DNA from: Wallemia ichthyophaga EXF-994
Taxonomy: Eukaryota; Fungi; Basidiomycota
Reading direction: 5' to 3'
DNA: 32,000 nucleotides
Assembly: GCF_000400465.1 (NCBI RefSeq)
Contig: NW_008806289.1
Span: 60,001 to 92,000 of the forward strand
Below the pieces are notes generated by a model. That model was not told where the DNA came from, did no database searches, and saw only the letters and a list, made by a program, of their open reading frames with translations. The position numbers were made by a program, and so were the translations under genes. The first letter of the stretch is position 1. Each line of letters starts with the position of its first letter. This document shows, one piece after another, positions 1,958 through 28,671 of the stretch.

Positions 1958-3827
1958 TCACTGGCTATTCAGCATCGAAAGCAACGCTTGAACTGATTGT
2001 GGGTTAGGTGGTGCTTCTGAGGGTGCTTGCTGTGGTTGTACTGGTTGCTGTTGATGTATTGATTGCTGCTGCACCGGTTGCACTGGTTGCACTGGCTGCC
2101 GCTGCTGTATACGTGGATCTCTTCCCGCTGTCGACATACCCGGTACGGAAGAAACGGGTTGCATTGTCTGATAACCGTTGTACATGGGTTGCTGAGGTGC
2201 ATTTGGCTGTGCACTCTGGTAGCCCGCTCCAGCACCCCCACCCATTCCTATTCCCATTCCTGGCATTGCTCCTGCTCCTGCTCCTACTGGGGCTGGCGCA
2301 TACCCGCCCACACTTCCACTACCACTACCGCTCACGTTACTGCTCGCTGCCTGCAAGATACTCATTATGTTTGGTGGGAGGCTGCTTTGTTGTTGCTGTG
2401 GTTGTGGTTGTGGCGGTTGGGGAGCGTGAGGTGTATGTGTATGTGCGTGTGTATGTGGATGGGGGTGCGGTTGCATGCCGAGTGGGGGTGATTGACTCGC
2501 ATAGTATGGCGGTTGCGTGGGCTGCATGAATGGCGGCGTAGGCATCATAGGTGGTGCAGTGTGTGCAGTGTGCGCGGGTGCGGGTGCGTGCGTCGGCATT
2601 TGCATCGCTCCTGCTCCTGCTCCTGCTCCTGCGCCCACTGCCGCTCCTCCCACACTCGGATTCACGTTCATGTTCATGTTCAGCGTCGACGGATTCAGCG
2701 AGCTGAGCAAAGCTTGTACACGCTGCGCATCTGCTAAGCGGGAAGTGTCTAGTGTTGTGCCATATGCATTTGCAGCATTATAAGGAGCAGGAGTAGAGGA
2801 GAGAGTAGCGGGTAGATATCCACCATAATGCTGCTGTGGCTGTGGTGGTCGACTGATTTGACCTGAAATGTTGTTAGGTGACGCACTGACAATCTTCTCT
2901 CGCTCACTCACGATTCGAATACGCGTTGCGGACATTGCTCTCATTGCTATTGTGGCCGTAGCTGCGGGGAGCACTCGGAGCACTCGGAGTACCAGAAACA
3001 CCAGAAACACCAGGACCATCACTTATACTGTCGCCGCGACGATTTTTCGACCGACGCTGACCTCCGCGTCTCGATCTTTTAGCTGCAGACTTGCTAGCAG
3101 ACTCATTGAGCGCAGCCGCAGAGAAATCCCTAGGAGGGTTGTTCACCAAATGCTCAGCACCCATTTTATCAGCATAACCACCAGATTTCTTAGGGGCGGA
3201 GACCATTGGACAATCCCATTCAAAGTAGAGGTTCAGCGTGCCATCGAGCCAAGGTTTCATATTCAGATTATCAAAAGCAGCAAGGGCAGACCTCTCGTCG
3301 AAGAATTCAACATAGCGGCTATCACTTCTATCGTCATAATCTCTGATATCTTTGACTTGGCCATATTGTTCAAACAGATCAGACAGCGCCGAGTCGTTGA
3401 TTGGCTCAGTGCAAGACTCTAACCAAACAGACAGCGTGCCTTGGTGTTTACCGCGGTCACAGGGCTGTGAAGTCTCGTCAGCCTGTGGGAGACTGTAATG
3501 GACGTCTAGGGGGCGACCACCAATATGGGAGCCCTGCATTGCATTGAAAGCAGACTCAGCGGCGCGGACGTCGAAATAAGTGATGAAGCACATACCGCGC
3601 CTCTTTATCAGGTCAAAGAAGTTAGCGAGCTCGCCGTAAGATTCAAAAGGGGTGCGTATAAGCGCTGAATCTGCTTCGTAGGCGATATTACGGACGAAGA
3701 GAGTTCTACAAGGCTTAACACGCTGTACGCGTTCATGAGGCTGGCTGTGCTGCTCGGGATCGCCGTCGAATGAAGCTGGATTTTGCGGAAGCGGGTGGTG
3801 TACGTGCTTGGATCTATCTGCTGGCAT
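1958..3827 (-). CDS. Mei2-like RNA-binding protein (RRM1+RRM2) with long P/Q/G/A low-complexity tail, about 606 aa, 2 exons
   Basis: RTLFVRNI...RGMCFITYFDVRAA...GGRPLDVHYS and QGTL...YVEFFDERSA match the Mei2/AML-type RRM1 and RRM2. A GTGAGT..CTAAC..CAG intron at 2863-2911 (49 nt) joins track ORFs 2904..3827 and 1958..3022 in frame (YSNR/QISRPP). Confidence 0.85.
2607..2630 (-). repeat. Coding hexamer microsatellite, (GCTCCT)x4 on the plus strand, encoding Gly-Ala repeats
   Basis: Four exact copies inside the RRM-protein tail. Other 6- and 9-nt coding repeats lie nearby (PVQ repeats, GVS/PSA repeats). Confidence 0.85.
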
Positions 3828-3893: not shown

Positions 3894-4616
3894 ATGCCAT
3901 CACCGAAAACACTAAATTTTAAGTTAGTTTTGCTGGGGGAATCAGCTGTAGGGAAATCTTCCATGTGAGTTTATATATATGTACATGTCTTTATCATCCT
4001 CTCACGCCTCCACCAGCGTCATGCGCTACGTCAACAACCAATTTTCAGACGATAGGGAATCTACGATAGGCGCGGCTTTCTTGACACAGCACATGAAAGT
4101 CGGTGAGGATACTATCAAGTTTGAAATCTGGTGGGTGCTTGATCCACCCCTGATATAATCACACTCACTCATATAATGTCTTACAGGGACACAGCCGGTC
4201 AAGAACGCTTCGTTTGTTTGGCTCCTATGTACTACAGAAACGCACACGCTGCTCTCGTCGTTTACTCTCTCGACTCCAAAGATAGCTTCGATAGGGCTGT
4301 CAAGTGGATCGAGGAACTACGGAGGCAGTCAGACACCCATACTATCATCATCCTCGCAGGCAACAAATCAGATATCCCTGATGATACCAAACAAGTCTCT
4401 CCTCATGATGCTCAGGCTGTGGCTGATGAAATGCAGGTCGAATTTTCAACCACTTGCAGCGCAAAGAGCGGTGGCGGTATTGAACAACTCTTTGTTGAGA
4501 TTGGTAACCGTCTTCCTATTGAACAAGCTAAGCAAAAGGCCTTTAAATCCCCTCAACAAGCTATCAAGCTCGATAAGGCTGACTCAAGTGGCCAAACAGA
4601 GACATGTGCTTGCTGA
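3894..4616 (+). CDS. VPS21: Rab5-family GTPase (Vps21/Ypt51/Ypt5-like), 3 exons
   Basis: Exon 1 (3894-3964) encodes FKLVLLGESAVGKSS. After intron 3965-4016 comes ESTIGAAFLTQ...KFEIW, then DTAGQERF, GNKSD, CSAK and a C-terminal CAC prenylation motif. Confidence 0.93.
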
Positions 4617-4669
4617 ATTTTCGCATTAAAGAAATGTTGTATTCATATCGAAGGTATATTGATATTGTG

Positions 4670-5436
4670 TTAAAACTGATCGATTGTTGTCTTCTTTTTA
4701 CCCAATTTCATTCCACTGCCCTTGAATCCAGATGATGTTTGAGTTGAAGGGGGTGTAGGTGCGGCGGATGCGGATGAAGGTGAAGGTGCATCAAATGAAG
4801 GTGAAATGTTAAGCTCAGAGGAAGAAGAGTACTTGCCAGCAGATAAACCAGTTTGTGCACCAACTTTTGCAGCTTCCCTACGTTGCATCTCTAAAGCTCT
4901 CGCCCGTCTCTTCAACTCCTCCTTAGCCTCCATTTCTTTGTTCTTTGCAATAATATCTTGAATCTTTTCCTCGTGACTCTCCATTTCCAACAAAGATTTA
5001 ATTTGGTGTATGTTGTTGTTGTCTCTGTATCCAAACGCAATAATTTCATCCCAAGCGACCAACAAATCGAAAGCGTTATTAATAACAGACTCCTGGGTGT
5101 GCTGCTTAATGATATCGATAGTTATCCTGCTAAATAAAGATAAAGATTCAATGTCCTGGAGTATATTTGAACCCTTGTTTGTGATCAGCACCAGATAGAG
5201 CTCATCTAGTGGCTGATACACAAATCTTATGTTTTCAATTTCAACTGTAGTATGCTGGCTGCCTAAGGGAATTAACTTTGGGAACGTATTGAGTAAGCCT
5301 TCTACTCTAGATCTTGTCAATTGCATGTATTGACGGGATATGATGGCTATGTGTGTTTTTGAGAAATGTCTTAATATCCCAATACAAACCCACGCTTTCC
5401 TGATTTCGTTGAGATGGCTGCGCTTAGAATGGTCAT
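4670..5436 (-). CDS. RET2: Coatomer subunit delta (longin domain plus helices only, about 239 aa, no mu-homology domain), 2 exons
   Basis: ATG at 5436, MTILSAAISTKSGK, intron 5347-5393 (GTGGGT..TAG), then PIISRQY...RFVYQPLDELY...SNILQD...MESHEEKI...GMKLGKK. This is the canonical delta-COP N-terminal half. Confidence 0.92.
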
Positions 5437-5592
5437 TGTGGTTGTTGAGGTGTGAGGTGTGAGGTGGGAGCAAGTATTTCTTTAGTTTTATATTTTAATA
5501 TTTCCGTGTTTTTATGTTTTTATAATTATATTTCAATTCTTAATACACCCTTCCGCCTTCTCGACCCATCACCACCCGACCACTCACTCACG

Positions 5593-7021
5593 ATGGAATC
5601 TGCCATTCTTGAATTGATAAGCCATAATGACATCACTGATCCAAACCAGCTTCTCAGGCTCCTTATTTTTCACTATCCATCCCTCAACCTTTCTTTCAAT
5701 CATTATGACCTAATCACCGATTCTCTATCAAACCTCCGTTTAAGCCTCCCTTCAACATCTTATACTCCTTTTTCCCCACAGAAACCATCGCTGTACTCTT
5801 CCTACGCCCGTTCTATCATTCCTGATGAAAATTTTATCCAAATTTGTCCTAACACGACCAGATCTGACTGTACCTTGGAATGTACTAGCGTACACTTTCA
5901 ACCTATTCTCAAGCCATACTCTGATCATTCATTCGGTCACTGCTCTTATCTTAACACTTGCTACCCTTTCTACAACAACACCCCTCCTTCCCTCTCAAAC
6001 GCTTTTCAAGCTACAAAGCTCAACAGCCCCAGATTAGACCGTACTTGCAGATATTTGCATTTTGAGCTGGAGCAGCCTACTCCTCCAACTAAAAGTCGCT
6101 ATACTGATCTAGTTGATGGTGAATCTCTCAATTACAGATCAGATTTGGATAAGTTGCTCAATAACAAGAGATTTCCCGCCCAATATCTCAATTGCGATCT
6201 CAGATCATTCGATTACAACACCCTCGGCAAGTTTCAAATTATTGTGGCCGACCCTCCTTGGGATATACATATGAGTTTACCCTATGGTACTCTTACAGAT
6301 GATGAAATGCGTAAAATGCCTATGTCAACACTCTCAGAAGAAGGTACGCTTATCTTTCTCTGGGTCACAGGCCGTGCTATGGATTTGGGCAGAGAATGTC
6401 TTTCAATTTGGGGGTTGGTGAATTTAATGTGTTGTTGTCTCTAACTGACAAACATTGACAGCTTCAAAAGAGTTTGTATAATCTTTTAAACGGTTGGCAT
6501 CTGATGAAAAAACTCCAGGTCGAGGAAATAGCCTGGGTGAAGATCAACCAACTTCAGCGTCTGATACGCACAGGTCGTACAGGACACTGGCTTAATCACA
6601 CTAAAGAGCATTGTCTGGTCGGTATCAAAGTGTCCGAAGATGGTGTCGTCCGTTGGCCTGAGTGGTTGAACAAAGGCATAGATTGCGATGTGATAGTTAG
6701 CGAGGGTGGGTAATGGTCTTTAGAGCACTTGAATTGAACTTTGATATAATAAACAGTACGCGAAACGAGTCGGAAACCAGACGAACTTTATGGTATGATC
6801 GAGAGGTGCTGCCCTTCAGGTCGCAAAGTGGAGTTGTTCGGTCGGCGGCACAACGGACGTGATGGTTGGCTCACATTAGGAAATCAGATAGGGAAGGATG
6901 TTGTACATGACAATGATCTCGCAAGCAGGTTGAATGCAAGGTGTGTATGAGGTGCTAGGATTACAATACAATGCTAATATGTTACAGGTACCCGGAGAAG
7001 AAGATACAAAGTCAGTCGTAG
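5593..7021 (+). CDS. IME4: mRNA m6A methyltransferase catalytic subunit (METTL3/Ime4, MT-A70 family), 5 exons
   Basis: Cys/His zinc-finger region (VHF..CSYLNTC..CRYLHFE), catalytic [41 protein letters not shown] and C-terminal RYP. Introns 6414-6461, 6472-6518, 6706-6756, 6941-6987. Confidence 0.93.
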
Positions 7022-7793: not shown

Positions 7794-9134
7794 ATGGCAG
7801 ATAACCTAGAGCACCCAGACCACGGCAAGGATACCCCTTACTTTGCTTACTACGCCGCACTCGTTAACCAGGCTAATATGCTCATGGATTCTGCTCGTAC
7901 TGGTGTTTATCAGCAAAGCATCCTTGGTAACTCTCAAACGGCTTTCTTGGGAAAGGATGTACTCGACGTCGGTGCTGGCTCCGGCATTCTCTCCTTCTTC
8001 AGCGCTCAGGCAGGTGCTAAAACCGTTTACGCTTGCGAAGCTTCAGATATCGCATCGAAATTGCAGCTGATTGTCGATGAAGCTGATAATGGTGGCAAGA
8101 ATGCCTTCCTCAAGGATAAAATTAAAGTTGTTAAATGTTTGTTTTGGGTAGTGAAAAATTTACACACACTAATTCACCCATAGCTAAGATAGAAGATGCT
8201 GCTACTAGCCATTCGATACCCAAAAAGGTTGATACTATCGTCAGTGAACCAATCGGTGTTCTCCTCGTTCATGAACGTATGATTGAGTCTTTCATCGAGG
8301 CACGCGATAAATTCCTTAAGCCCGGTGGATCCATGTTCCCTTCGTCAGGTTGGTGAAACAAGATGGCTTAGCTTGAATACATCTTAACATGCCCACTTCA
8401 GGAACAATTGAACTTGCCCCATTCACTGATGACGCCTTATACACTGAGACAGCACAGAAAAGTGGATTTTTCCAGCAAACTAACTTTCTCGGCGTTGATT
8501 TGAGTGTTTTGCAAGACGCTGCAAATGAAGAAGCTTTTAGTGGGTTTACCAGGGTGTTTGAGGCTGTCCAACTAACCCCAAGACAGGTCAACCCGTCGTT
8601 GGAATGTTCCCACCAAACCAACTTATCGCAAACACTACAAACAATCACCTCATAGACTTTTATACATGCTCGATGAACGATCTAACCTCATTCACTATAC
8701 CATTCACCTGGCAAATCACACGAACGGCACTTTTGCATGGAATTGGTGGATGGTTTGACCTGCATTTCAAAGCAACACAAGCAGGTGGATTGGATTTATA
8801 TCTTTCTACAGGTCCAACAGCTCCACGTACTCATTGGCAAGCTACGCGACTGCTTTTTAGGGAACCATTAGCAGTAAACGCGGGAGAAGTGGTTAAAGGG
8901 GAGCTTAAATTTAGTGTGAACGATCAAAGAAGCTATGATATAGTTGGTACAACAGAAATACAAACGTCCAAGGAATTCTACACAGCTCAACATCCTCAAA
9001 GTAAATCAAACCCTTACGTCAGAAAACAAGTATGGAGATTACATGACCAGACGTATAATTACAACTACAGCAATATGTATCACATACCAGAGAGCATGGC
9101 AGCTGCATATTCAGGATATGAGCCAGTTGCTTAG
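7794..9134 (+). CDS. CARM1: Type I protein arginine methyltransferase, CARM1/PRMT4-like, 4 exons
   Basis: YFAYY..QANMLMD..RTGVYQ, VLDVGAGSGILS, double-E loop SEPIGVLLVHERM, LAPFTD..LY, GVDLS, QPVVG, LSTGP..PRTHW and QRSYDI all parallel CARM1 rather than PRMT1. Introns 8137-8183, 8349-8401 and one near 8540-8587. Confidence 0.85.
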
Positions 9135-9169: not shown

Positions 9170-11348
9170 ATGTCGTTGCGAGATCGCCAGAGGAAGAATA
9201 TTGAAAATATTTTGAATTTCAACGATAATAAGAAAACGAGTGATTTAGTGTGGAAGGTGTTGGTGCTTGATGGCGTATCTAAGGATGTCCTCAGCACCGC
9301 CGTTAAAGTACAGGATCTTAGGGAACAGGGCGTGACACTACATGCGTGAGGATTCACTTATAACACATACACGCACGCTCACAGTGTCCAGATTCCTCCA
9401 CAACGAAAGACCTCAAATGAGTGATGTTCCTGCCATTTACTTTGTAGAGCCATCGGTGGATAACATGAAGCGTATCGCTGCAGATGTCGGCAACTCGCTC
9501 TACGAATCATTCTACATCAATTTCACGTCACATATACCCAAACATCTTCTTGAGCAACTCGCCAGCTCAATCGCCCAAACGGGGAGAGAGGATTTAGTAA
9601 AGCAGGTTTATGATCAATACTTAGACTACGTAGTTTTATCACCCACTCTATTCTCTCTTCTCCCTTCCTCTTCCACACCTTCGTTTCAGATTCTCAACCA
9701 TCCGTCTTCCTCAGAGGAGATTATAGAAGCGGAAGTCGACAGGATTTCGCAGAGCTTGTTCAGCGTTCTCGGTACTGTTGGGTCTGTACCCATTATCAGA
9801 TGTCCGCGCGGTAATGCGTCGGAAATGGTAGCCCGTAAGCTAGATGAACGTTTGAGGGATCATCTCCTCTCTACGCGCAATTCTAGTCTTTTCAATGAAG
9901 ATAGATCTCTTCAGAGACCCCTGCTTATTCTGTTCGATAGGACCCTCGATCTCATACCAATGTTCTCGCACAGCTGGACATACCAGGCACTTATTGGTGA
10001 TGTACTCGACCTGAAGCTCAACAGAGTCAAAGTAGAGACGCCAGAAAATGGAAAATTGTCGAAAAAGTCATACGATCTCGACTATAAGGATTTTTTCTGG
10101 TCTAAAAATGCTCCAAACCCTTTCCCACAAGTCGCAGAGGAGATCGACGCTGAGCTTACCAAGTACAAATATGACGCAAGTGAGATTACCAAGTCGACTG
10201 GAGTATCTGATGTGAAAGATATTAGTCAAGTGTGGGTTGCTCAATATAGGTGAAACTGTGGTCTGACGTACGTACTATAGCGACTTTTCTTCAAATGCTG
10301 CTAATCTTAAGAGCGCTATCACCGCCTTACCGGAGTTGACTGCGAGGAAGACTACGTTGGACTCGCATATGAATATCGCTACATCATTGCTCACTGCTAT
10401 CAAGACTAGAGGGCTCGATACCCTTTTCCAGACTGAGGAAGTTGCAGCCAGACAGGTGAGGGCGTTTTATTGACCAAATTGTCATCTGAACTTTACACAA
10501 TCAGTCTAAAAATCAAATCCTTGACGTATTGAAAGAAGTCGATGGGGCTACTCCTGATGATAAACTTAGATTGATTATCATTTGGTATCTTTCAGTTCCT
10601 TCTCCTAATTCGGCTGATGTTGCTGAGTTGGAGAGGTACTTGGCTGATAAGGGTATCGATTTGAAACCATTTTCTTATATTAAGCAGTGGGTTGGAGGTT
10701 TTACGAAATTTATCTCTTACAAGATGAAATAGAGCTCGCCAAGTGAGCAGAATGACTTCACTTACTGCTGCTGCGTCGACCGTTGCTGCTGCTCCTACTA
10801 ATGGTGGTAGTGATTTATTTAAAGGATTTAGTTCGATAAGTAACAGAGTAGGTAGAATTTTGATAAATGGTCAACAACTAACATTTCATAGCTCACCGAC
10901 AGATTGCGTGAAGGTGGTGTAGGATTTGACAATATACTCTCAGGAGTAAAAAACTTCCTTCCAGCCAAGAGTAGGTCGATTATTGGTGGGATTGATATCC
11001 ACTTACTTTGTTTTCACAGAGGAGCTGGCTATCACAAGACTGACAGAGGCACTTATGGACCCGTACAACTGCTCATCACAAGCTAGTCAGGACGTAGACG
11101 ATTACCTCTATTTCGATCCAAAGCAGTCGAGGTCGACATATGGGCAGAAACCAAGACAGCAGGGTGGCCACAAGCAGAGCTTCGATGAGTCGTTGGTATT
11201 TGTCGTTGGTGGTGCTTCTCTGGTGGAACATGCCAACCTTGTGGAGTGGGCGACGCGCCCTCAACAAACGCAAAAGAAGGTAACTTATGGTGGAACAGAT
11301 ATAAGCTCACCCAAGGAGTTTGTTGGTGTATTATCAAATTTATCATAA
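9170..11348 (+). CDS. SLY1: Sec1/Munc18-family protein Sly1 (ER-Golgi), multi-exon
   Basis: MSLRDRQ...VWKVLVLD...[71 protein letters not shown]. Stop at 11346-11348. Confidence 0.93.
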
Positions 11349-24674: not shown

Positions 24675-26888
24675 CTAATAGAATAATTTAGTGAATGACA
24701 ATACGAATGCAGTTCCTATGATGAGGATGATTTGACGACGTTTCGAGAGTGTGGTTAGGGTGGTGTCTGGTATGGGTGATTTGTTGAGTGGTAGGGAGGA
24801 ATGAGAGGAATGAGAGGAATTTGGGGTGACAAAAGCGACAACGATTCCGACAAAATATGTAGATACCTCGTTAATCTTGATTGAGAGTGGGATAAACAAG
24901 GCCAAACCAGCAGCGAAATTGAGCAGTTTGTTTGAGTAAGGGAGTAGTACGAGTGTACCTTTTGAATCACCAGCCAAAAGGAGGTGAAATTGCAATACAA
25001 ACAGCTCCAAACTGCATCTACCAAGCTGAGCGAGGAGGGTGGAGTGATGAGAGCGAGCAGCGTTAGAGCAATTCCTCAACACCAAACAACCCATTACGAC
25101 AATGGGGGAGATGAAGGTGTGATATTGGTTGTAGGTGTACTTGATGGGAGTAACAAGCGTATCTAGCACAATCATCATCACCACTACTACAGCGGATATC
25201 GAAATGGTGGTAGTGTTGATCCACCGATGCGTCTGCGTGTTTTCGGAATGGTGAATTAGGACAGCCACTAATGCACCTGTGAATGGCGCCAAGATATCCA
25301 AATTAAGTCTGAATTTGTATTCGTAGGGTATAGCGCTATTCAAGTAGGGTATGTTCAAAGCAGCCAACGAAAGCGCGAGAGATATCAGCAGTTTGATGGA
25401 GACAAGTTTTGGGTTAGAGTTGAAATGCGAGTAAGAGTAGAAGGTAATCCAGAGAACTGTATACCAAATGGTGACGATGGGGATAAAGTAGTAAGTGATG
25501 TACTGTACGTCGAGGACATGACACAAAACCGCAGTGAGGATATTATACCGTGTCATTACTGCAATGTAACGCGGGATTGTGGGTTGGTTGTTTTTGAGGA
25601 AATACATACTATTCCCGTAGCCTTGGAGGAGGAGATATGAAGCAACGAGGATGCGCACGGGGATGTAGAACTGTGGGTGTTTAGACCCGTTGAAGTAGTG
25701 GTAGATGAGTATAACAAGCTGCATCGCCCCTTTTAATTCATCCGTCTGGGCACGATTTAGCACACCCGTGTTGTCTTGATTTCGCGTGGCGGTCTTGTAG
25801 CCCACTCCACCGACCATGAGAAGCAGGGGGAGTACAGCTAATAGGGAGAACTGCTTAGGGGATTTCGTGAAAATATGCGATCTGTCTGTGAGATAAGCGA
25901 GGAGGAGTACAGCAGCAAAGATGGACGATTGTGTGAGGAGGTATTGACGCGGGTGATCGGGTTTGAATGCCGCTTGTACCACTTTGGCGGCGGCAACAAG
26001 GACGAGGAAAGTGAGACACAAAAATTGCATCGGTCGCGGTGAAGGGTACGGTCTGCAGCAAGAGACGTTGTTGGATGGTGTGAGATCGTTGCACCAGTAG
26101 TTGAGTAGGAGCTGTGTAGCGTGGTGCAACGCTTTGGGGGAGTAATGGAGACCATCGGTGGTCTCGTTGGGGGATGCGCTGACTATGTCATTCAGCGCGA
26201 AAGGTATGGGGATCGTGCGGCGTACACTGAGATCGGCATTCATTGCGTCGACATCGTCGTCAGTTATTGTTAGGCTGCGTTCGGAAGACAGCTTGTTGAT
26301 TTCCGGGTGGAGGACAGGGAGGAGGAGGGAGTTGTAGGGGAGGGTGCGGGTGTAGACGGAGTCCACGGTGGCTGACCAGGACTGGATATCGACGTAGCGG
26401 AGGTACCAGAGACCTGTGCCGAGTACGGTAAAGGTATTCCGAGGGAGTGTGTCCAAGTCGGTGGAATTGAGGTATGGATCCCATTTAAAGTGGATAGAAA
26501 GTGCGCGTGCACTGTCGCCGCTAGATTTGTCCGCGTGTTTCGCCACAGAAGGGTTTCTAAGTGAGAGAAAAAGAGCTAAATTGTCGTATAATTGGCGTGT
26601 GGTGCTGTCACCGATGAAAGCGACTTGCTCACCACTCAAACACTGCTCAGCGGATAGACGAGAGTGAGTGGCTGGAAGGCAGTTTTCAGTGTACAATCCA
26701 CGCTCTAAATGAGTATCAGTGAGCAGCTCGTTGCAATGTTGTTTATCGTCTGAGGGGTGTTAGGGGGAAATTGCGTGCTGTACCCCAGACACACCGTTTA
26801 TCGAGTAAATGAGTATGCTGAGGGTTATTAGTACGCAGATTGATGCCGATAACAATTTGTGCATCGAGAGGGACGTCGTGGGAGTCAT
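24675..26888 (-). CDS. CAS1: Cas1/CASD1-family polysaccharide O-acetyltransferase (SGNH-like domain plus multi-TM Cas1_AcylT domain), 2 exons
   Basis: N-terminal TM exon 26795-26888, 45-nt intron 26750-26794, FIGDSTTRQ, DGLHY, LNRAQTDELKG.MQ..ILIYHY and many hydrophobic segments. The start ATG (26888) is a best guess. The name refers to the Cryptococcus capsule gene, not the CRISPR cas1. Confidence 0.85.
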
Positions 26889-27594: not shown

Positions 27595-28671
27595 ATGCCT
27601 AATCGCGTACATGAGCTGTGGTGGGAGGAGAACAAGACACGAGTGTGGACGGTGGAGGTGGATAGCGGCAACTACGTAGCGCGGCGACAGGATAATGACC
27701 AGATAAACGGGACGAAGCTTCTCAACATAACGCGCATCACGCGGGGCAAGCGGGATGGAATCCTGAAGAACGAGAAGAGCAGGCAGGTGGTGAAGACGGG
27801 CACTATATCTCTCAAGGGCGTTTGGATACCACTGGACCGAGGCCTCGTGCTAGCGCGGCAGTTTGGGATTGAGCAGCTCGTCTATCCCCTTTTCGAAGCG
27901 AATGTGGGCGAGTATGTCGAGAACAGCGTCGTGAGCCAGCACGCTATCAAGAGGAAGTCACTGAACAGCTTGCATTTGGTGGATAACCTCACCACTAACA
28001 GCGAGTTGCCTGCGAGCAAAAGACGGTCTACGGTTAGCACGTATAGGCCTAATGGGCATGTGAATATGCAGCAAACACATGTACACCCAGCACACGCACA
28101 CCCGCACCCACACTCCCTCCCCCACCCGCACTCTATCCTCATGAGCGGTAGTGTGAGTGGCAGCGGCAGTGGCGGCGCGAGTACACCGTCGCCTTACGTC
28201 GACTCGTTCGGATATGCCCCAGCTTATGAGCAGGGTCAAAACCAAGGTCAAGCACACGCGCACGAAGAAGCACCACAATACGCTGGCAGATCACGCAATA
28301 CGTCGAGCGCGTCGGAGTGGATGACCAATTGGAGCGCGTCGTCAAGTAGCCCAATCCTCCCAGCCACACCAATCAACGGCACTTTCTCGCCGGTTATGAA
28401 CACGTTCCAGTCACTCGCCATGCACTCACCCCCCGTGCCTATACCGAGCTATTACTACGACAGCAGCTCGTCTTATTTCCCAAGTTACCACCAGAAACAG
28501 CAGCAAGGGGAAAGAAGGGTCGGAATGAGTGGGGTGAATAGCATGGGTGGAGTGGGTGGAGTGAATAATATGAACCACCTCCCAAACACACTGCCACCCA
28601 CTCTCCCAAATACACCGACGCAGTCTCACTTGAGTCCGAATAGTAATGAGTATATGCACATGGCCCAATAA
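27595..28671 (+). CDS. APSES transcription factor, StuA/Efg1/Ust1 subfamily (358 aa, intronless)
   Basis: VARRQDNDQINGTKLLN..RITRGKRDGILKNEK.R.VVK.G...LKGVWIPL..LVYPLF, followed by a low-complexity H/P/Q/S tail. TATATAA at about 27422. Confidence 0.88.
   Translation: MPNRVHELWWEENKTRVWTVEVDSGNYVARRQDNDQINGTKLLNITRITRGKRDGILKNEKSRQVVKTGTISLKGVWIPLDRGLVLARQFGIEQLVYPLFEANVGEYVENSVVSQHAIKRKSLNSLHLVDNLTTNSELPASKRRSTVSTYRPNGHVNMQQTHVHPAHAHPHPHSLPHPHSILMSGSVSGSGSGGASTPSPYVDSFGYAPAYEQGQNQGQAHAHEEAPQYAGRSRNTSSASEWMTNWSASSSSPILPATPINGTFSPVMNTFQSLAMHSPPVPIPSYYYDSSSSYFPSYHQKQQQGERRVGMSGVNSMGGVGGVNNMNHLPNTLPPTLPNTPTQSHLSPNSNEYMHMAQ

What the first reader, a model, noticed from the sequence alone, without database searches (positions are those of the whole stretch)
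4617..5436. Naturally truncated delta-COP lacking the entire mu-homology domain
Seen: the ORF ends (GMKLGKKKTTIDQF-stop) at about 239 aa, right at the linker that normally precedes the mu-homology domain (MHD). Only 53 bp separate its stop from the convergent Rab5 stop, so there is no room for downstream MHD exons. Established: delta-COP is normally about 500+ aa; its MHD binds di-tryptophan motifs (Dsl1 lasso, Gcs1 ArfGAP); in yeast the longin domain plus following helices suffice for viability. Inference: this organism runs COPI without the MHD, or encodes it as a separate split gene. That predicts co-loss of WxW motifs in Dsl1/Gcs1 and a simplified coat-tether system.
Basis: partly seen in the sequence, partly recalled or inferred. 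Interest (0 to 1): 0.75.

Follow-up and report, generated by a model that had tools for sequence, protein, structure and literature searches.

The report
Short delta-COP without its cargo-tether domain
[quoted passage not shown] The same short form is the normal delta-COP of fission yeast and of several other fungal lineages, so it is a genuine but not unique feature.

Summary
On the minus strand a two-exon gene (ATG 5436, 47-nt intron 5347-5393, stop 4670-4672) encodes a 239-aa delta-COP ending GMKLGKKKTTIDQF. It lies 53 bp from the stop of a convergent Rab5 gene. It matches the annotated W. ichthyophaga protein (one substitution). It keeps the longin domain, helices a and b (I143/I146/I147) and the start of helix c, and has no mu-homology domain (MHD).

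The truncation is old and selected. Five Wallemia lineages stop at the same place; four loci fetched show the same synteny. Synonymous sites are saturated and dN/dS is about 0.03-0.09.

No MHD was found in the 32-kb window. Database searches returned no Wallemia MHD-only protein and no full-length paralogue.

It is not unique. S. pombe Ret2 (240 aa), four other Schizosaccharomyces species, Cryptococcus, Trichosporon, Exobasidium, Tilletia and Rhizopus have the same short form, all ending just after the GMxLGKK motif. A tree needs at least five independent losses.

Published truncations explain why it works: yeast Ret2 without the MHD is viable, and delta(1-243) binds Arf1-GTP as well as full length.

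The predicted co-loss of Trp motifs in Dsl1/Gcs1 could not be tested. Verdict: a new member of a known kind, of modest interest.

The parts
5394..5436 (-). delta-COP exon 1 (Met1 to the first base of codon 15)
   Evidence: The spliced product equals the annotated 239-aa W. ichthyophaga protein apart from one substitution.
5347..5393 (-). 47-nt intron (GTGGGT...CATAG)
   Evidence: An intron at the same position, with GT..AG ends, is seen in the other Wallemia loci.
4673..5346 (-). delta-COP exon 2 (the last two bases of codon 15, then residues 16-239)
   Evidence: tblastn with 76 full-length delta-COPs matches only 4673-5362.
5030..5436 (-). Longin domain (residues 1 to about 120; the range includes the intron)
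   Evidence: Pfam Clat_adaptor_s on residues 8-131 (22.1 bits, just under its 22.5-bit cut-off). PDB 5mu7_B and 5a1u_H matches. AlphaFold2 pLDDT about 90.
4853..5011 (-). Helices a and b (residues 127-179), including I143, I146 and I147
   Evidence: AlphaFold2 predicts a helix over 127-179. These positions are invariant or nearly invariant in the alignment. PMC5482573 describes helix b as the Arf1-contacting helix needed for HDEL retrieval.
4727..4852 (-). Disordered Ser/Pro-rich linker (residues 180-221)
   Evidence: pLDDT below 50. Evolves faster than the core: dN/dS 0.2-0.33 for residues 176-239.
4673..4726 (-). Conserved FKGxGMxLGKK motif and the first residues of helix c (residues 222-239), which form the natural C-terminus
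   Evidence: G226 is invariant and M227, L229, G230 and K232 are at least 90% conserved. The motif aligns with bovine 225-238, and helix c is about 233-243.
4670..4672 (-). TAA stop codon
   Evidence: A stop at the equivalent place is present in the window, the three other Wallemia loci compared and W. hederae.
4617..4669 (.). 53-bp gap between the two convergent stop codons
   Evidence: The same convergent arrangement is present in W. mellicola, where the gap is 44 bp, and in two further Wallemia contigs.
3894..4616 (+). Convergent Rab5-family GTPase gene (204 aa, with introns)
   Evidence: Pfam Ras. The best PDB matches are Rab5 proteins. Annotated gene coordinates come from L004.

Best explanation
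The gene encodes the functional, and probably the only, delta subunit of coatomer in Wallemia ichthyophaga, in a naturally MHD-less form.

Shown: it retains everything that builds delta-COP into the coat core. That is the longin domain that sits in the beta-COP solenoid, helix a, the Arf1-contacting helix b with its three critical isoleucines, and the conserved GMxLGKK motif with the start of helix c. It ends there, and it has been under strong purifying selection in this form since before the sampled Wallemia lineages diverged.

Inferred: COPI in this organism assembles and retrieves cargo through the core functions. It lacks the MHD-dependent extras. Those are the docking site for acidic Trp-based motifs (Dsl1 lasso, Gcs1/ArfGAP1-type GAPs, Cex1/SCYL-type proteins) and the MHD-mediated inter-triad 'linkage II'. 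Tether and GAP recruitment must therefore use the remaining sites: alpha/epsilon-COP for Dsl1, and the gamma-appendage for Glo3-type GAPs.

The same solution has arisen repeatedly in fungi, including fission yeast.
For: - Gene model and exact end point. It matches the annotated protein apart from one substitution.
- Orthology to delta-COP: 5mu7_B at E = 2e-61 over residues 1-174, and 5a1u_H at E = 1.7e-57 over residues 1-225. The best full-length relatives are 51-58% identical over the whole short protein.
- I143, I146 and I147 and the GMxLGKK motif are conserved.
- AlphaFold2 gives a confident longin domain, a helix over 127-179 and a disordered tail.
- Five Wallemia lineages stop at the same place. 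The four loci fetched have the same neighbours, and 23 W. mellicola contigs carry the identical protein.
- pS is 0.58-0.80 against pN 0.07-0.20, giving dN/dS of 0.03-0.09 wherever dS could be estimated.
- No MHD in the window, or within 4-6 kb of the gene in the long-contig relatives (L012 is only a 1.6-kb contig).
- An MHD-only profile search listed all 119 hits, and none was from Wallemia.
- A search ranked by the Wallemia N-terminal region among proteins of 287-912 aa found no Wallemia protein.
- Functional sufficiency from the literature: the delta-COP MHD is not essential in yeast, even when epsilon-COP is deleted as well. Ct delta(1-243) binds Arf1-GTP like the full-length protein (PMC5482573; PMC6737914).
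- Precedents: S. pombe Ret2 is 240 aa and four further Schizosaccharomyces species have 233-237 aa. Cryptococcus, Exobasidium, Tilletia and Rhizopus short forms have no MHD within 6 kb either side.
Against: - Absence of a delta-type MHD from the whole Wallemia genome was not tested directly, because no Wallemia genome could be scanned.
- The MHD profile search scored only the 8000 candidates sharing most words, and only proteins of 155-493 aa.
- A very divergent full-length paralogue, under about 50% identity in the N-terminal part, would not have reached the top 120.
- No transcript or protein data were examined.
- Assembly into coatomer is inferred from conservation, not shown.
Confidence: 0.85

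Rival explanations
1. Split gene: the MHD is still made, from a separate gene elsewhere in the Wallemia genome, and joins the coat in trans or acts alone.
For: It cannot be excluded without a whole-genome scan. MHD-only open reading frames of 265-295 aa do exist in the database for unnamed organisms, but they are most likely exon-level gene calls.
Against: All 119 hits of the MHD profile search were listed, and none is from Wallemia, Cryptococcus or Schizosaccharomyces. The database does hold annotated proteomes and Logan assemblies of several Wallemia species. No MHD is present in the 32-kb window or in the syntenic loci.
Confidence: 0.06
2. Accessory paralogue: a second, full-length delta-COP gene does the canonical job, and this short gene is an extra copy, as may be the case in Rhizopus.
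For: Mucorales relatives (Benjaminiella, Parasitella, Lichtheimia) have full-length proteins 92% identical in places to the Rhizopus short locus. This suggests, but does not show, that both forms may coexist in Rhizopus.
Against: No Wallemia protein of 287-912 aa is among the 120 proteins most similar to the Wallemia N-terminal region, and the best long hits are 51-57% identical proteins from other fungi. UniRef names the 237-241-aa protein 'Coatomer subunit delta' in W. mellicola and W. hederae. Strong purifying selection on the short gene fits an essential single-copy role.
Confidence: 0.05
3. Artefact or recent pseudogene: a misassembly, a strain-specific nonsense mutation, or an unrecognised intron that splices past the stop.
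For: Nothing was found in its favour.
Against: The structure is the same in the window, in two other W. ichthyophaga assemblies, in W. mellicola contigs from several assemblies (23 read), in W. hederae and in two Logan assemblies. The stop positions differ by a few codons between species, and the tails are conserved up to the stop. dN/dS is far below 1. The 53 bp beyond the stop and the antisense strand of Rab5 hold no MHD-like coding sequence.
Confidence: 0.02
4. Misidentified family: the protein is zeta-COP or an AP sigma/mu longin subunit rather than delta-COP.
For: Pfam reports only the generic Clat_adaptor_s domain, at a borderline score.
Against: Identity to delta-COPs is 50-58% across residues 1-225, including the delta-specific helix b and the GMxLGKK motif. 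AP2 sigma matches only at E of about 4e-4, and no zeta-COP chain reached E = 1e-3.
Confidence: 0.01

Closest known systems
Schizosaccharomyces pombe Ret2 (UniProt O74496, 240 aa) and its orthologues in S. octosporus, S. osmophilus and S. cryophilus (237 aa) and S. japonicus (233 aa)
   Same: The architecture is the same: longin domain, helices a and b, linker and GMQLGKK motif, ending 7-10 residues after the motif (S. octosporus ends ...GMQLGKKKTTTPTF, Wallemia ...GMKLGKKKTTIDQF). There is no PF00928 domain. These proteins are annotated as the coatomer delta subunit. S. japonicus has no MHD within 6 kb either side.
   Different: The loss was independent. Schizosaccharomyces groups with the ascomycetes next to the full-length Saitoella protein, while Wallemia is a separate long-branched basidiomycete clade. 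Identity to Wallemia is about 46-48%.
Canonical full-length delta-COP (mammalian ARCN1, 511 aa; S. cerevisiae Ret2; C. thermophilum delta-COP; basidiomycete proteins of 515-562 aa)
   Same: Residues 1-239 are collinear with residues 1 to about 238 of the mammalian protein. The longin domain, helix a, helix b isoleucines and the GMxLGKK motif are the same.
   Different: It lacks the rest of helix c, the remaining linker and the whole MHD of about 240 aa. It therefore lacks the site that binds Wx(1-6)[WF] motifs, and the linkage II contact in the coat lattice (PMC5482573; PMC7145657).
Experimental truncations: yeast Ret2 without the MHD (Arakel et al. 2016, as cited in PMC6737914 and PMC5482573) and C. 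thermophilum delta(1-243)
   Same: The natural protein ends at about the same place as these constructs. The constructs support growth and bind Arf1-GTP like the full-length protein.
   Different: Those are laboratory constructs in organisms that normally have the MHD. Here the short form has been fixed and maintained by selection. The exact correspondence to C. thermophilum residue 243 was not checked.
Short delta-COPs of Cryptococcus deneoformans and C. amylolentus (259 and 253 aa), Trichosporon asahii (275 aa), Exobasidium rhododendri (246 aa), Tilletia (258-287 aa) and Rhizopus (225-253 aa)
   Same: They end 10-26 residues after the same motif in every form where the motif was located; it was not located in T. 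horrida or T. indica, and the Trichosporon tail was not examined. No MHD lies within 6 kb either side of the checked loci: C. deneoformans, R. azygosporus, Exobasidium and T. maclaganii.
   Different: These were separate events. In Cryptococcus the loss is recent enough to see. Cryptococcus sp. DSM 104549 has a 515-aa protein in the same flanking context, and the segment downstream of the motif has been replaced in C. deneoformans.
Loss of the MHD from another coat medium subunit: Dictyostelium TSET TCUP
   Same: This is a precedent for a lineage dropping the MHD of a longin-plus-MHD medium subunit while keeping the complex (PMC4031984).
   Different: It concerns a different complex (TSET, which is non-essential in Dictyostelium) and a different clade.

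Membership tests
delta-COP (coatomer delta subunit) orthologue group | N-terminal longin domain specifically related to delta-COP rather than to zeta-COP or AP sigma/mu | tested here: met
   5mu7_B E = 2e-61 and 5a1u_H E = 1.7e-57, against AP2 sigma at 4e-4. Identity to fungal delta-COPs is 50-58%.
delta-COP (coatomer delta subunit) orthologue group | Helix a and the COPI-specific amphipathic helix b, with the isoleucines needed for HDEL retrieval (I143, I146, I147) | tested here: met
   HEEKIQDIIAKNKE at residues 139-152. I146 is invariant and I143 and I147 are at least 90% conserved. Helix predicted over 127-179. The role of these residues is taken from PMC5482573.
delta-COP (coatomer delta subunit) orthologue group | Conserved linker motif KGxGMxLGKK leading into helix c | tested here: met
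   FKGSGMKLGKKKTTIDQF at residues 222-239. Only the first 5-6 residues of helix c are kept.
delta-COP (coatomer delta subunit) orthologue group | One delta-COP locus per genome, in conserved genomic context within the genus | tested here: inconclusive
   Synteny is conserved in the four Wallemia loci fetched. No second Wallemia hit appeared. No whole genome was scanned.
delta-COP (coatomer delta subunit) orthologue group | Incorporation into the beta/delta/gamma/zeta subcomplex of coatomer | not testable with these tools
   This needs biochemistry. It is inferred only from conservation of the beta-COP-contacting region.
Canonical longin-plus-MHD medium-subunit architecture (full-length delta-COP, AP mu) | C-terminal mu-homology domain (Pfam PF00928) | tested here: not met
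   No PF00928 hit. The protein ends at the equivalent of bovine F238, and the MHD begins near residue 271. No MHD in the window.
MHD-less fungal delta-COP (S. pombe Ret2 type) | A delta-COP N-terminal region of about 225-290 aa that ends within about 30 residues after the GMxLGKK motif, with no MHD coding sequence downstream | tested here: met
MHD-less fungal delta-COP (S. pombe Ret2 type) | The short form is maintained by purifying selection and is not a fresh pseudogene | tested here: met
   dN/dS of 0.03-0.09 with saturated synonymous sites among Wallemia lineages.

The most novel reading that the evidence does not exclude
The delta-COP MHD has been lost independently at least five times in fungi: Wallemia, Schizosaccharomyces, Tremellales/Trichosporonales, Exobasidiomycetes and a Rhizopus copy. 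Each loss truncates the protein at the same point, just after the GMxLGKK motif and the start of helix c.

If this pattern is unreported, it marks that point as the natural minimal functional boundary of delta-COP. It also provides a set of phylogenetically independent natural experiments. The sharpest pair is Cryptococcus sp. DSM 104549 (full length) against C. neoformans/deneoformans (short). These pairs could test whether Trp-motif partners (Dsl1 lasso, Gcs1, Cex1/SCYL) co-evolve with the MHD.
Probability: 0.45. Interest if true: 0.45.

Novelty: new member of a known kind. Interest (0 to 1): 0.3.

Why it matters
For the Wallemia gene itself it matters little. It is an already annotated protein with the same architecture as fission-yeast Ret2, and the yeast truncation experiments already explain why it works.

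The wider pattern is of some use to COPI biology.
- It shows in nature, repeatedly, that the MHD-dependent functions can be dispensed with. These are Trp-motif docking of the Dsl1 tether and Gcs1-type ArfGAPs, and the linkage II lattice contact.
- Selection always keeps the sequence up to the GMxLGKK/helix-c boundary.
- It offers paired lineages for testing coat-tether co-evolution.
- It is a caution for annotators: a delta-COP of about 240 aa in fungi is not automatically a broken gene model.

Tried and rejected
- A cluster of weak tblastn hits of MHD sequences at 8892-9062 (E = 0.04-1.6) lies in the C-terminal beta-barrel of a protein arginine methyltransferase gene (Pfam PRMT_C in the annotated orthologue). 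I rejected it as spurious.
- All ORFs of at least 180 aa in the window were scanned with Pfam, apart from four out-of-frame, low-complexity or PRMT-fragment ORFs. None has an MHD.
- An idea that the truncation arose by a local inversion relative to a neighbouring RRM gene, because RRM genes also flank delta-COP in Cryptococcus and Tilletia. The Wallemia RRM, Rab5 and MT-A70 neighbours have no detectable counterparts in those loci, so I dropped it.
- Literature: Arakel 2016 and Suckling 2015 are not held. Searches for a paper describing natural MHD-less delta-COPs found none. What those two papers showed is cited second-hand from PMC6737914, PMC5482573, PMC4868844 and PMC7145657.
- The zeta-COP or sigma-adaptin identity was rejected.
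- MHD-only ORFs of 265-295 aa from unnamed organisms were not pursued. They are probably exon-level gene calls on metagenomic contigs.

Full report
**What is in the sequence**

The window is fungal nuclear DNA with short introns. On the minus strand an ATG at 5436 opens a gene with this structure:
- a 43-nt first exon (5394-5436);
- a 47-nt GT..AG intron (5347-5393);
- a 674-nt second exon (4673-5346);
- a TAA stop at 4670-4672.

The product is 239 aa and ends ...FKGSGMKLGKKKTTIDQF. On the plus strand a gene at 3894-4616 ends with TGA at 4614-4616. Its best solved relatives are Rab5 proteins: RABF2b, Rab5A/B/C and Ypt51. Exactly 53 bp separate the two stops. Reading through the TAA meets another stop after 8 codons.

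**Identity**

- The spliced protein is the NCBI protein 'hypothetical protein E3P81_01335 [Wallemia ichthyophaga]', 239 aa, apart from one substitution.
- Pfam sees only the longin-type Clat_adaptor_s region (residues 8-131), at 22.1 bits, just under its 22.5-bit cut-off. It also gives one sub-threshold hit on the low-complexity linker. It sees no mu-homology domain.
- Against solved structures, residues 1-174 match the C. thermophilum delta-COP(1-175) chain of the beta/delta crystal structure (5mu7_B, E = 2e-61). Residues 1-225 match mammalian delta-COP in the COPI coat models (5a1u_H, E = 1.7e-57). AP2 sigma appears only at E = 4e-4, and no zeta-COP chain appears.
- An exhaustive HMMER pass over 1.84 billion representatives gives full-length delta-COPs of 500-560 aa as the nearest relatives outside the protein's own cluster. 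Identity is up to 58% over the whole of the short protein.

**Where it ends**

PMC5482573 describes the delta-COP linker (residues 117-271) as containing three helices:
- helix a (127-135);
- helix b (139-165 or further), which contacts Arf1 and carries I143, I146 and I147, needed for HDEL retrieval;
- helix c, with cross-linked lysines 233, 241 and 243.

The bovine chain reads ...S223 K A L K L G A K G K233 E V D N F238 V D K241 L K243..., which matches those lysine numbers. The fungal motif KGMQLGKK aligns with ALKLGAKGK. Wallemia F239 therefore corresponds to bovine F238.

The protein keeps the longin domain, helix a, helix b (HEEKIQDIIAKNKE, with I143, I146 and I147 at the same numbers), the linker, the conserved motif and the first turn or two of helix c. 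It then stops about 30 residues before the MHD would begin. AlphaFold2 agrees: a confident longin domain (pLDDT about 90), one long helix over 127-179, and a disordered tail over 180-239.

**Is the truncation real and old?**

- *Same gene in other genomes.* Two other W. ichthyophaga assemblies and W. mellicola (241 aa; 23 contigs from several assemblies) have the same gene in the same context: Sly1, PRMT, MT-A70, delta-COP convergent with Rab5, then an RRM gene.
- *More lineages.* W. hederae has a 237-aa orthologue. Two further Wallemia lineages recovered from sequencing-run assemblies also show delta-COP convergent with the Rab gene.
- *Same stop.* All stop 9-16 residues after GMKLG. The tails are IDQF, IDNF, LDVTD and SIIDSMIGE, and the intron position is conserved.
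- *Selection.* Between lineages, synonymous sites are saturated (pS 0.58-0.80) and non-synonymous differences are few (pN 0.07-0.20). Where dS could be estimated, dN/dS was 0.04-0.09 overall and 0.03-0.08 for residues 16-175. The tail (176-239) evolves faster, at 0.2-0.33.

This excludes misassembly, a strain-specific nonsense mutation and a decaying pseudogene.

**Is the MHD somewhere else?**

- tblastn with 76 full-length delta-COPs and with 11 isolated fungal MHDs finds nothing credible in the 32-kb window. The only recurrent weak hit (8892-9062) is the beta-barrel of a PRMT gene.
- The long ORFs of the window are ordinary housekeeping genes. They include a DEDDh exonuclease, MT-A70, PRMT, Sly1, tRNA-splicing endonuclease, MTHFR, a TPR/APC subunit, kinases, Rad54, a Cas1p-like acyltransferase and a KilA-N protein.
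- A profile of 11 fungal MHDs was searched against 5.8 billion proteins, with a length window of 155-493 aa. It returned 119 hits, all listed, and none from Wallemia.
- To look for a full-length paralogue I used a query of full-length size but scored only its Wallemia N-terminal 239 residues. Among proteins of 287-912 aa, the 120 best are 51-57% identical delta-COPs of other fungi, and none is from Wallemia.

These are negative results with limits: a candidate cap, predicted proteins only, and no whole-genome scan. I therefore put 'no delta-type MHD in Wallemia' at about 0.85, not at certainty.

**Comparison with what is known**

The short architecture is not peculiar to Wallemia.
- S. pombe Ret2 (O74496) is 240 aa. 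S. octosporus, S. osmophilus and S. cryophilus have 237 aa and S. japonicus has 233 aa. All are annotated 'coatomer delta subunit Ret2'.
- Other short forms are C. deneoformans (259 aa), C. amylolentus (253), Trichosporon asahii (275), Exobasidium rhododendri (246), Tilletia species (258-287) and Rhizopus species (225-253).
- In every short form where the motif was located, the protein ends 7-26 residues after it. The motif was not located in T. horrida or T. indica, and the Trichosporon tail was not examined.
- In C. deneoformans, S. japonicus, R. azygosporus, Exobasidium and T. maclaganii, no MHD lies within 6 kb either side.

Close relatives of these lineages have full-length proteins. Examples are Saitoella (509 aa), Naganishia (562), Cryptococcus sp. 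DSM 104549 (515), Sympodiomycopsis (551), Ustilago (552-554), Agaricomycetes (about 530) and Mucorales (510-514).

A maximum-likelihood tree of the N-terminal region needs 6 changes of state, and its well-supported branches alone force at least 5. Wallemia forms its own clade on a long stem of 0.64 substitutions per site.

In Cryptococcus the event is still visible. The full-length and short loci share flanks, an RRM gene upstream and an SFM1-like gene downstream. Homology stops at residue 247, right after the motif, and the interior has been replaced.

**How it most likely works**

- *Shown.* The protein retains all the parts that the structural work assigns to the coat core and to Arf1 binding.
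- *From the literature.* The delta-COP MHD is not essential in yeast, even together with an epsilon-COP deletion. A C. thermophilum delta(1-243)/beta subcomplex binds Arf1-GTP as well as full length. The MHD forms the central contact of inter-triad linkage II (PMC5482573; PMC6737914). It also binds acidic Trp motifs of Dsl1 and Gcs1/ArfGAP1 (PMC7145657; PMC4868844).
- *Inferred.* Wallemia COPI buds and retrieves cargo with a core-only delta subunit. It lacks linkage II and the Trp-motif dock, and relies on alpha/epsilon-COP and the gamma-appendage for tether and GAP contacts.

PMC4868844 reports that the Dsl1 lasso is already absent from the homologues of aquatic fungi, plants and metazoans, and at least the metazoans keep the MHD (bovine delta-COP). 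The coupling is therefore loose at best.

**Verdict**

It is overstated in novelty. This is a new member of a known kind, the S. pombe Ret2 type.

The most interesting by-product is the recurrent, convergent truncation at the same boundary in at least five fungal lineages. I found no paper describing it in the searchable library. The two key primary papers were not available to check.

Noticed in passing
L006/L007 (C. deneoformans) versus L015 (Cryptococcus sp. DSM 104549): Within one genus, a full-length (515 aa) and a short (259 aa) delta-COP sit between the same flanking genes: an RRM gene upstream and an SFM1-like gene downstream. Homology ends at residue 247. The interior differs: MHD exons, a lactonase gene and a BBE oxidase gene in one, and a MUN/C2 gene in the other. 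This points to a recent rearrangement with a breakpoint just after the GMxLGKK motif.
   Followed up: partly
window 4673-5436 (-); tree: The Wallemia delta-COP clade sits on a long stem branch of 0.64 substitutions per site, against a median tip length of 0.12. This suggests faster evolution of the retained N-terminal part in this lineage.
   Followed up: no
window 9342-10253 and onwards (+); L013 7650-10029: A Sec1-family gene, probably Sly1 (another ER-Golgi trafficking factor), lies about 4 kb from delta-COP in Wallemia. In Exobasidium a Sec1-family gene is the immediate downstream neighbour of the short delta-COP. This may be coincidence or a remnant of linkage.
   Followed up: no
window 5437-5592: Only 156 bp separate the delta-COP start codon from the start of a divergently transcribed MT-A70 (m6A methyltransferase-like) gene at 5593-7019. 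The two genes probably share a bidirectional promoter in this compact genome.
   Followed up: no
window 1958-3827 (-): The RRM-protein gene next to Rab5 continues into a long, very low-complexity tract rich in Gln, Pro, His and Thr, with runs such as PHPHPHTHAHTHTPH, PQPQPQQQQ and VQPVQPVQ. This coincides with the locally high GC (0.56) and skewed AT content at 2001-3000.
   Followed up: no
P0150 (Furculomyces boomerangus, 523 aa): This annotated 'Coatomer subunit delta' consists of an unrelated extension of about 260 aa followed by a short, MHD-less delta-COP part at residues 264-490. It is either a fused gene model or another MHD-less lineage (Kickxellomycotina).
   Followed up: no
one search hits such as P0315, P0319 and P0324: Many MHD-only proteins of 265-295 aa lie on long contigs (up to 908 kb) from unnamed organisms. 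They are probably exon-level ORF calls on eukaryotic metagenome contigs. Genuine split delta-COP genes were not excluded.
   Followed up: no
window 24678-26696 (-) and 27595-28668 (+): A Cas1p-type 10-TM O-acyltransferase gene and a KilA-N (APSES-like) DNA-binding protein gene lie in the window. Both are ordinary fungal genes and are noted only for annotation.
   Followed up: no
window 4853-4855 (codon 194): The window differs from the deposited W. ichthyophaga protein P0001 by one residue, NISPSF against NILPSF. The window therefore comes from a different strain than the assemblies GCA_004918655 and GCA_004918745.
   Followed up: partly
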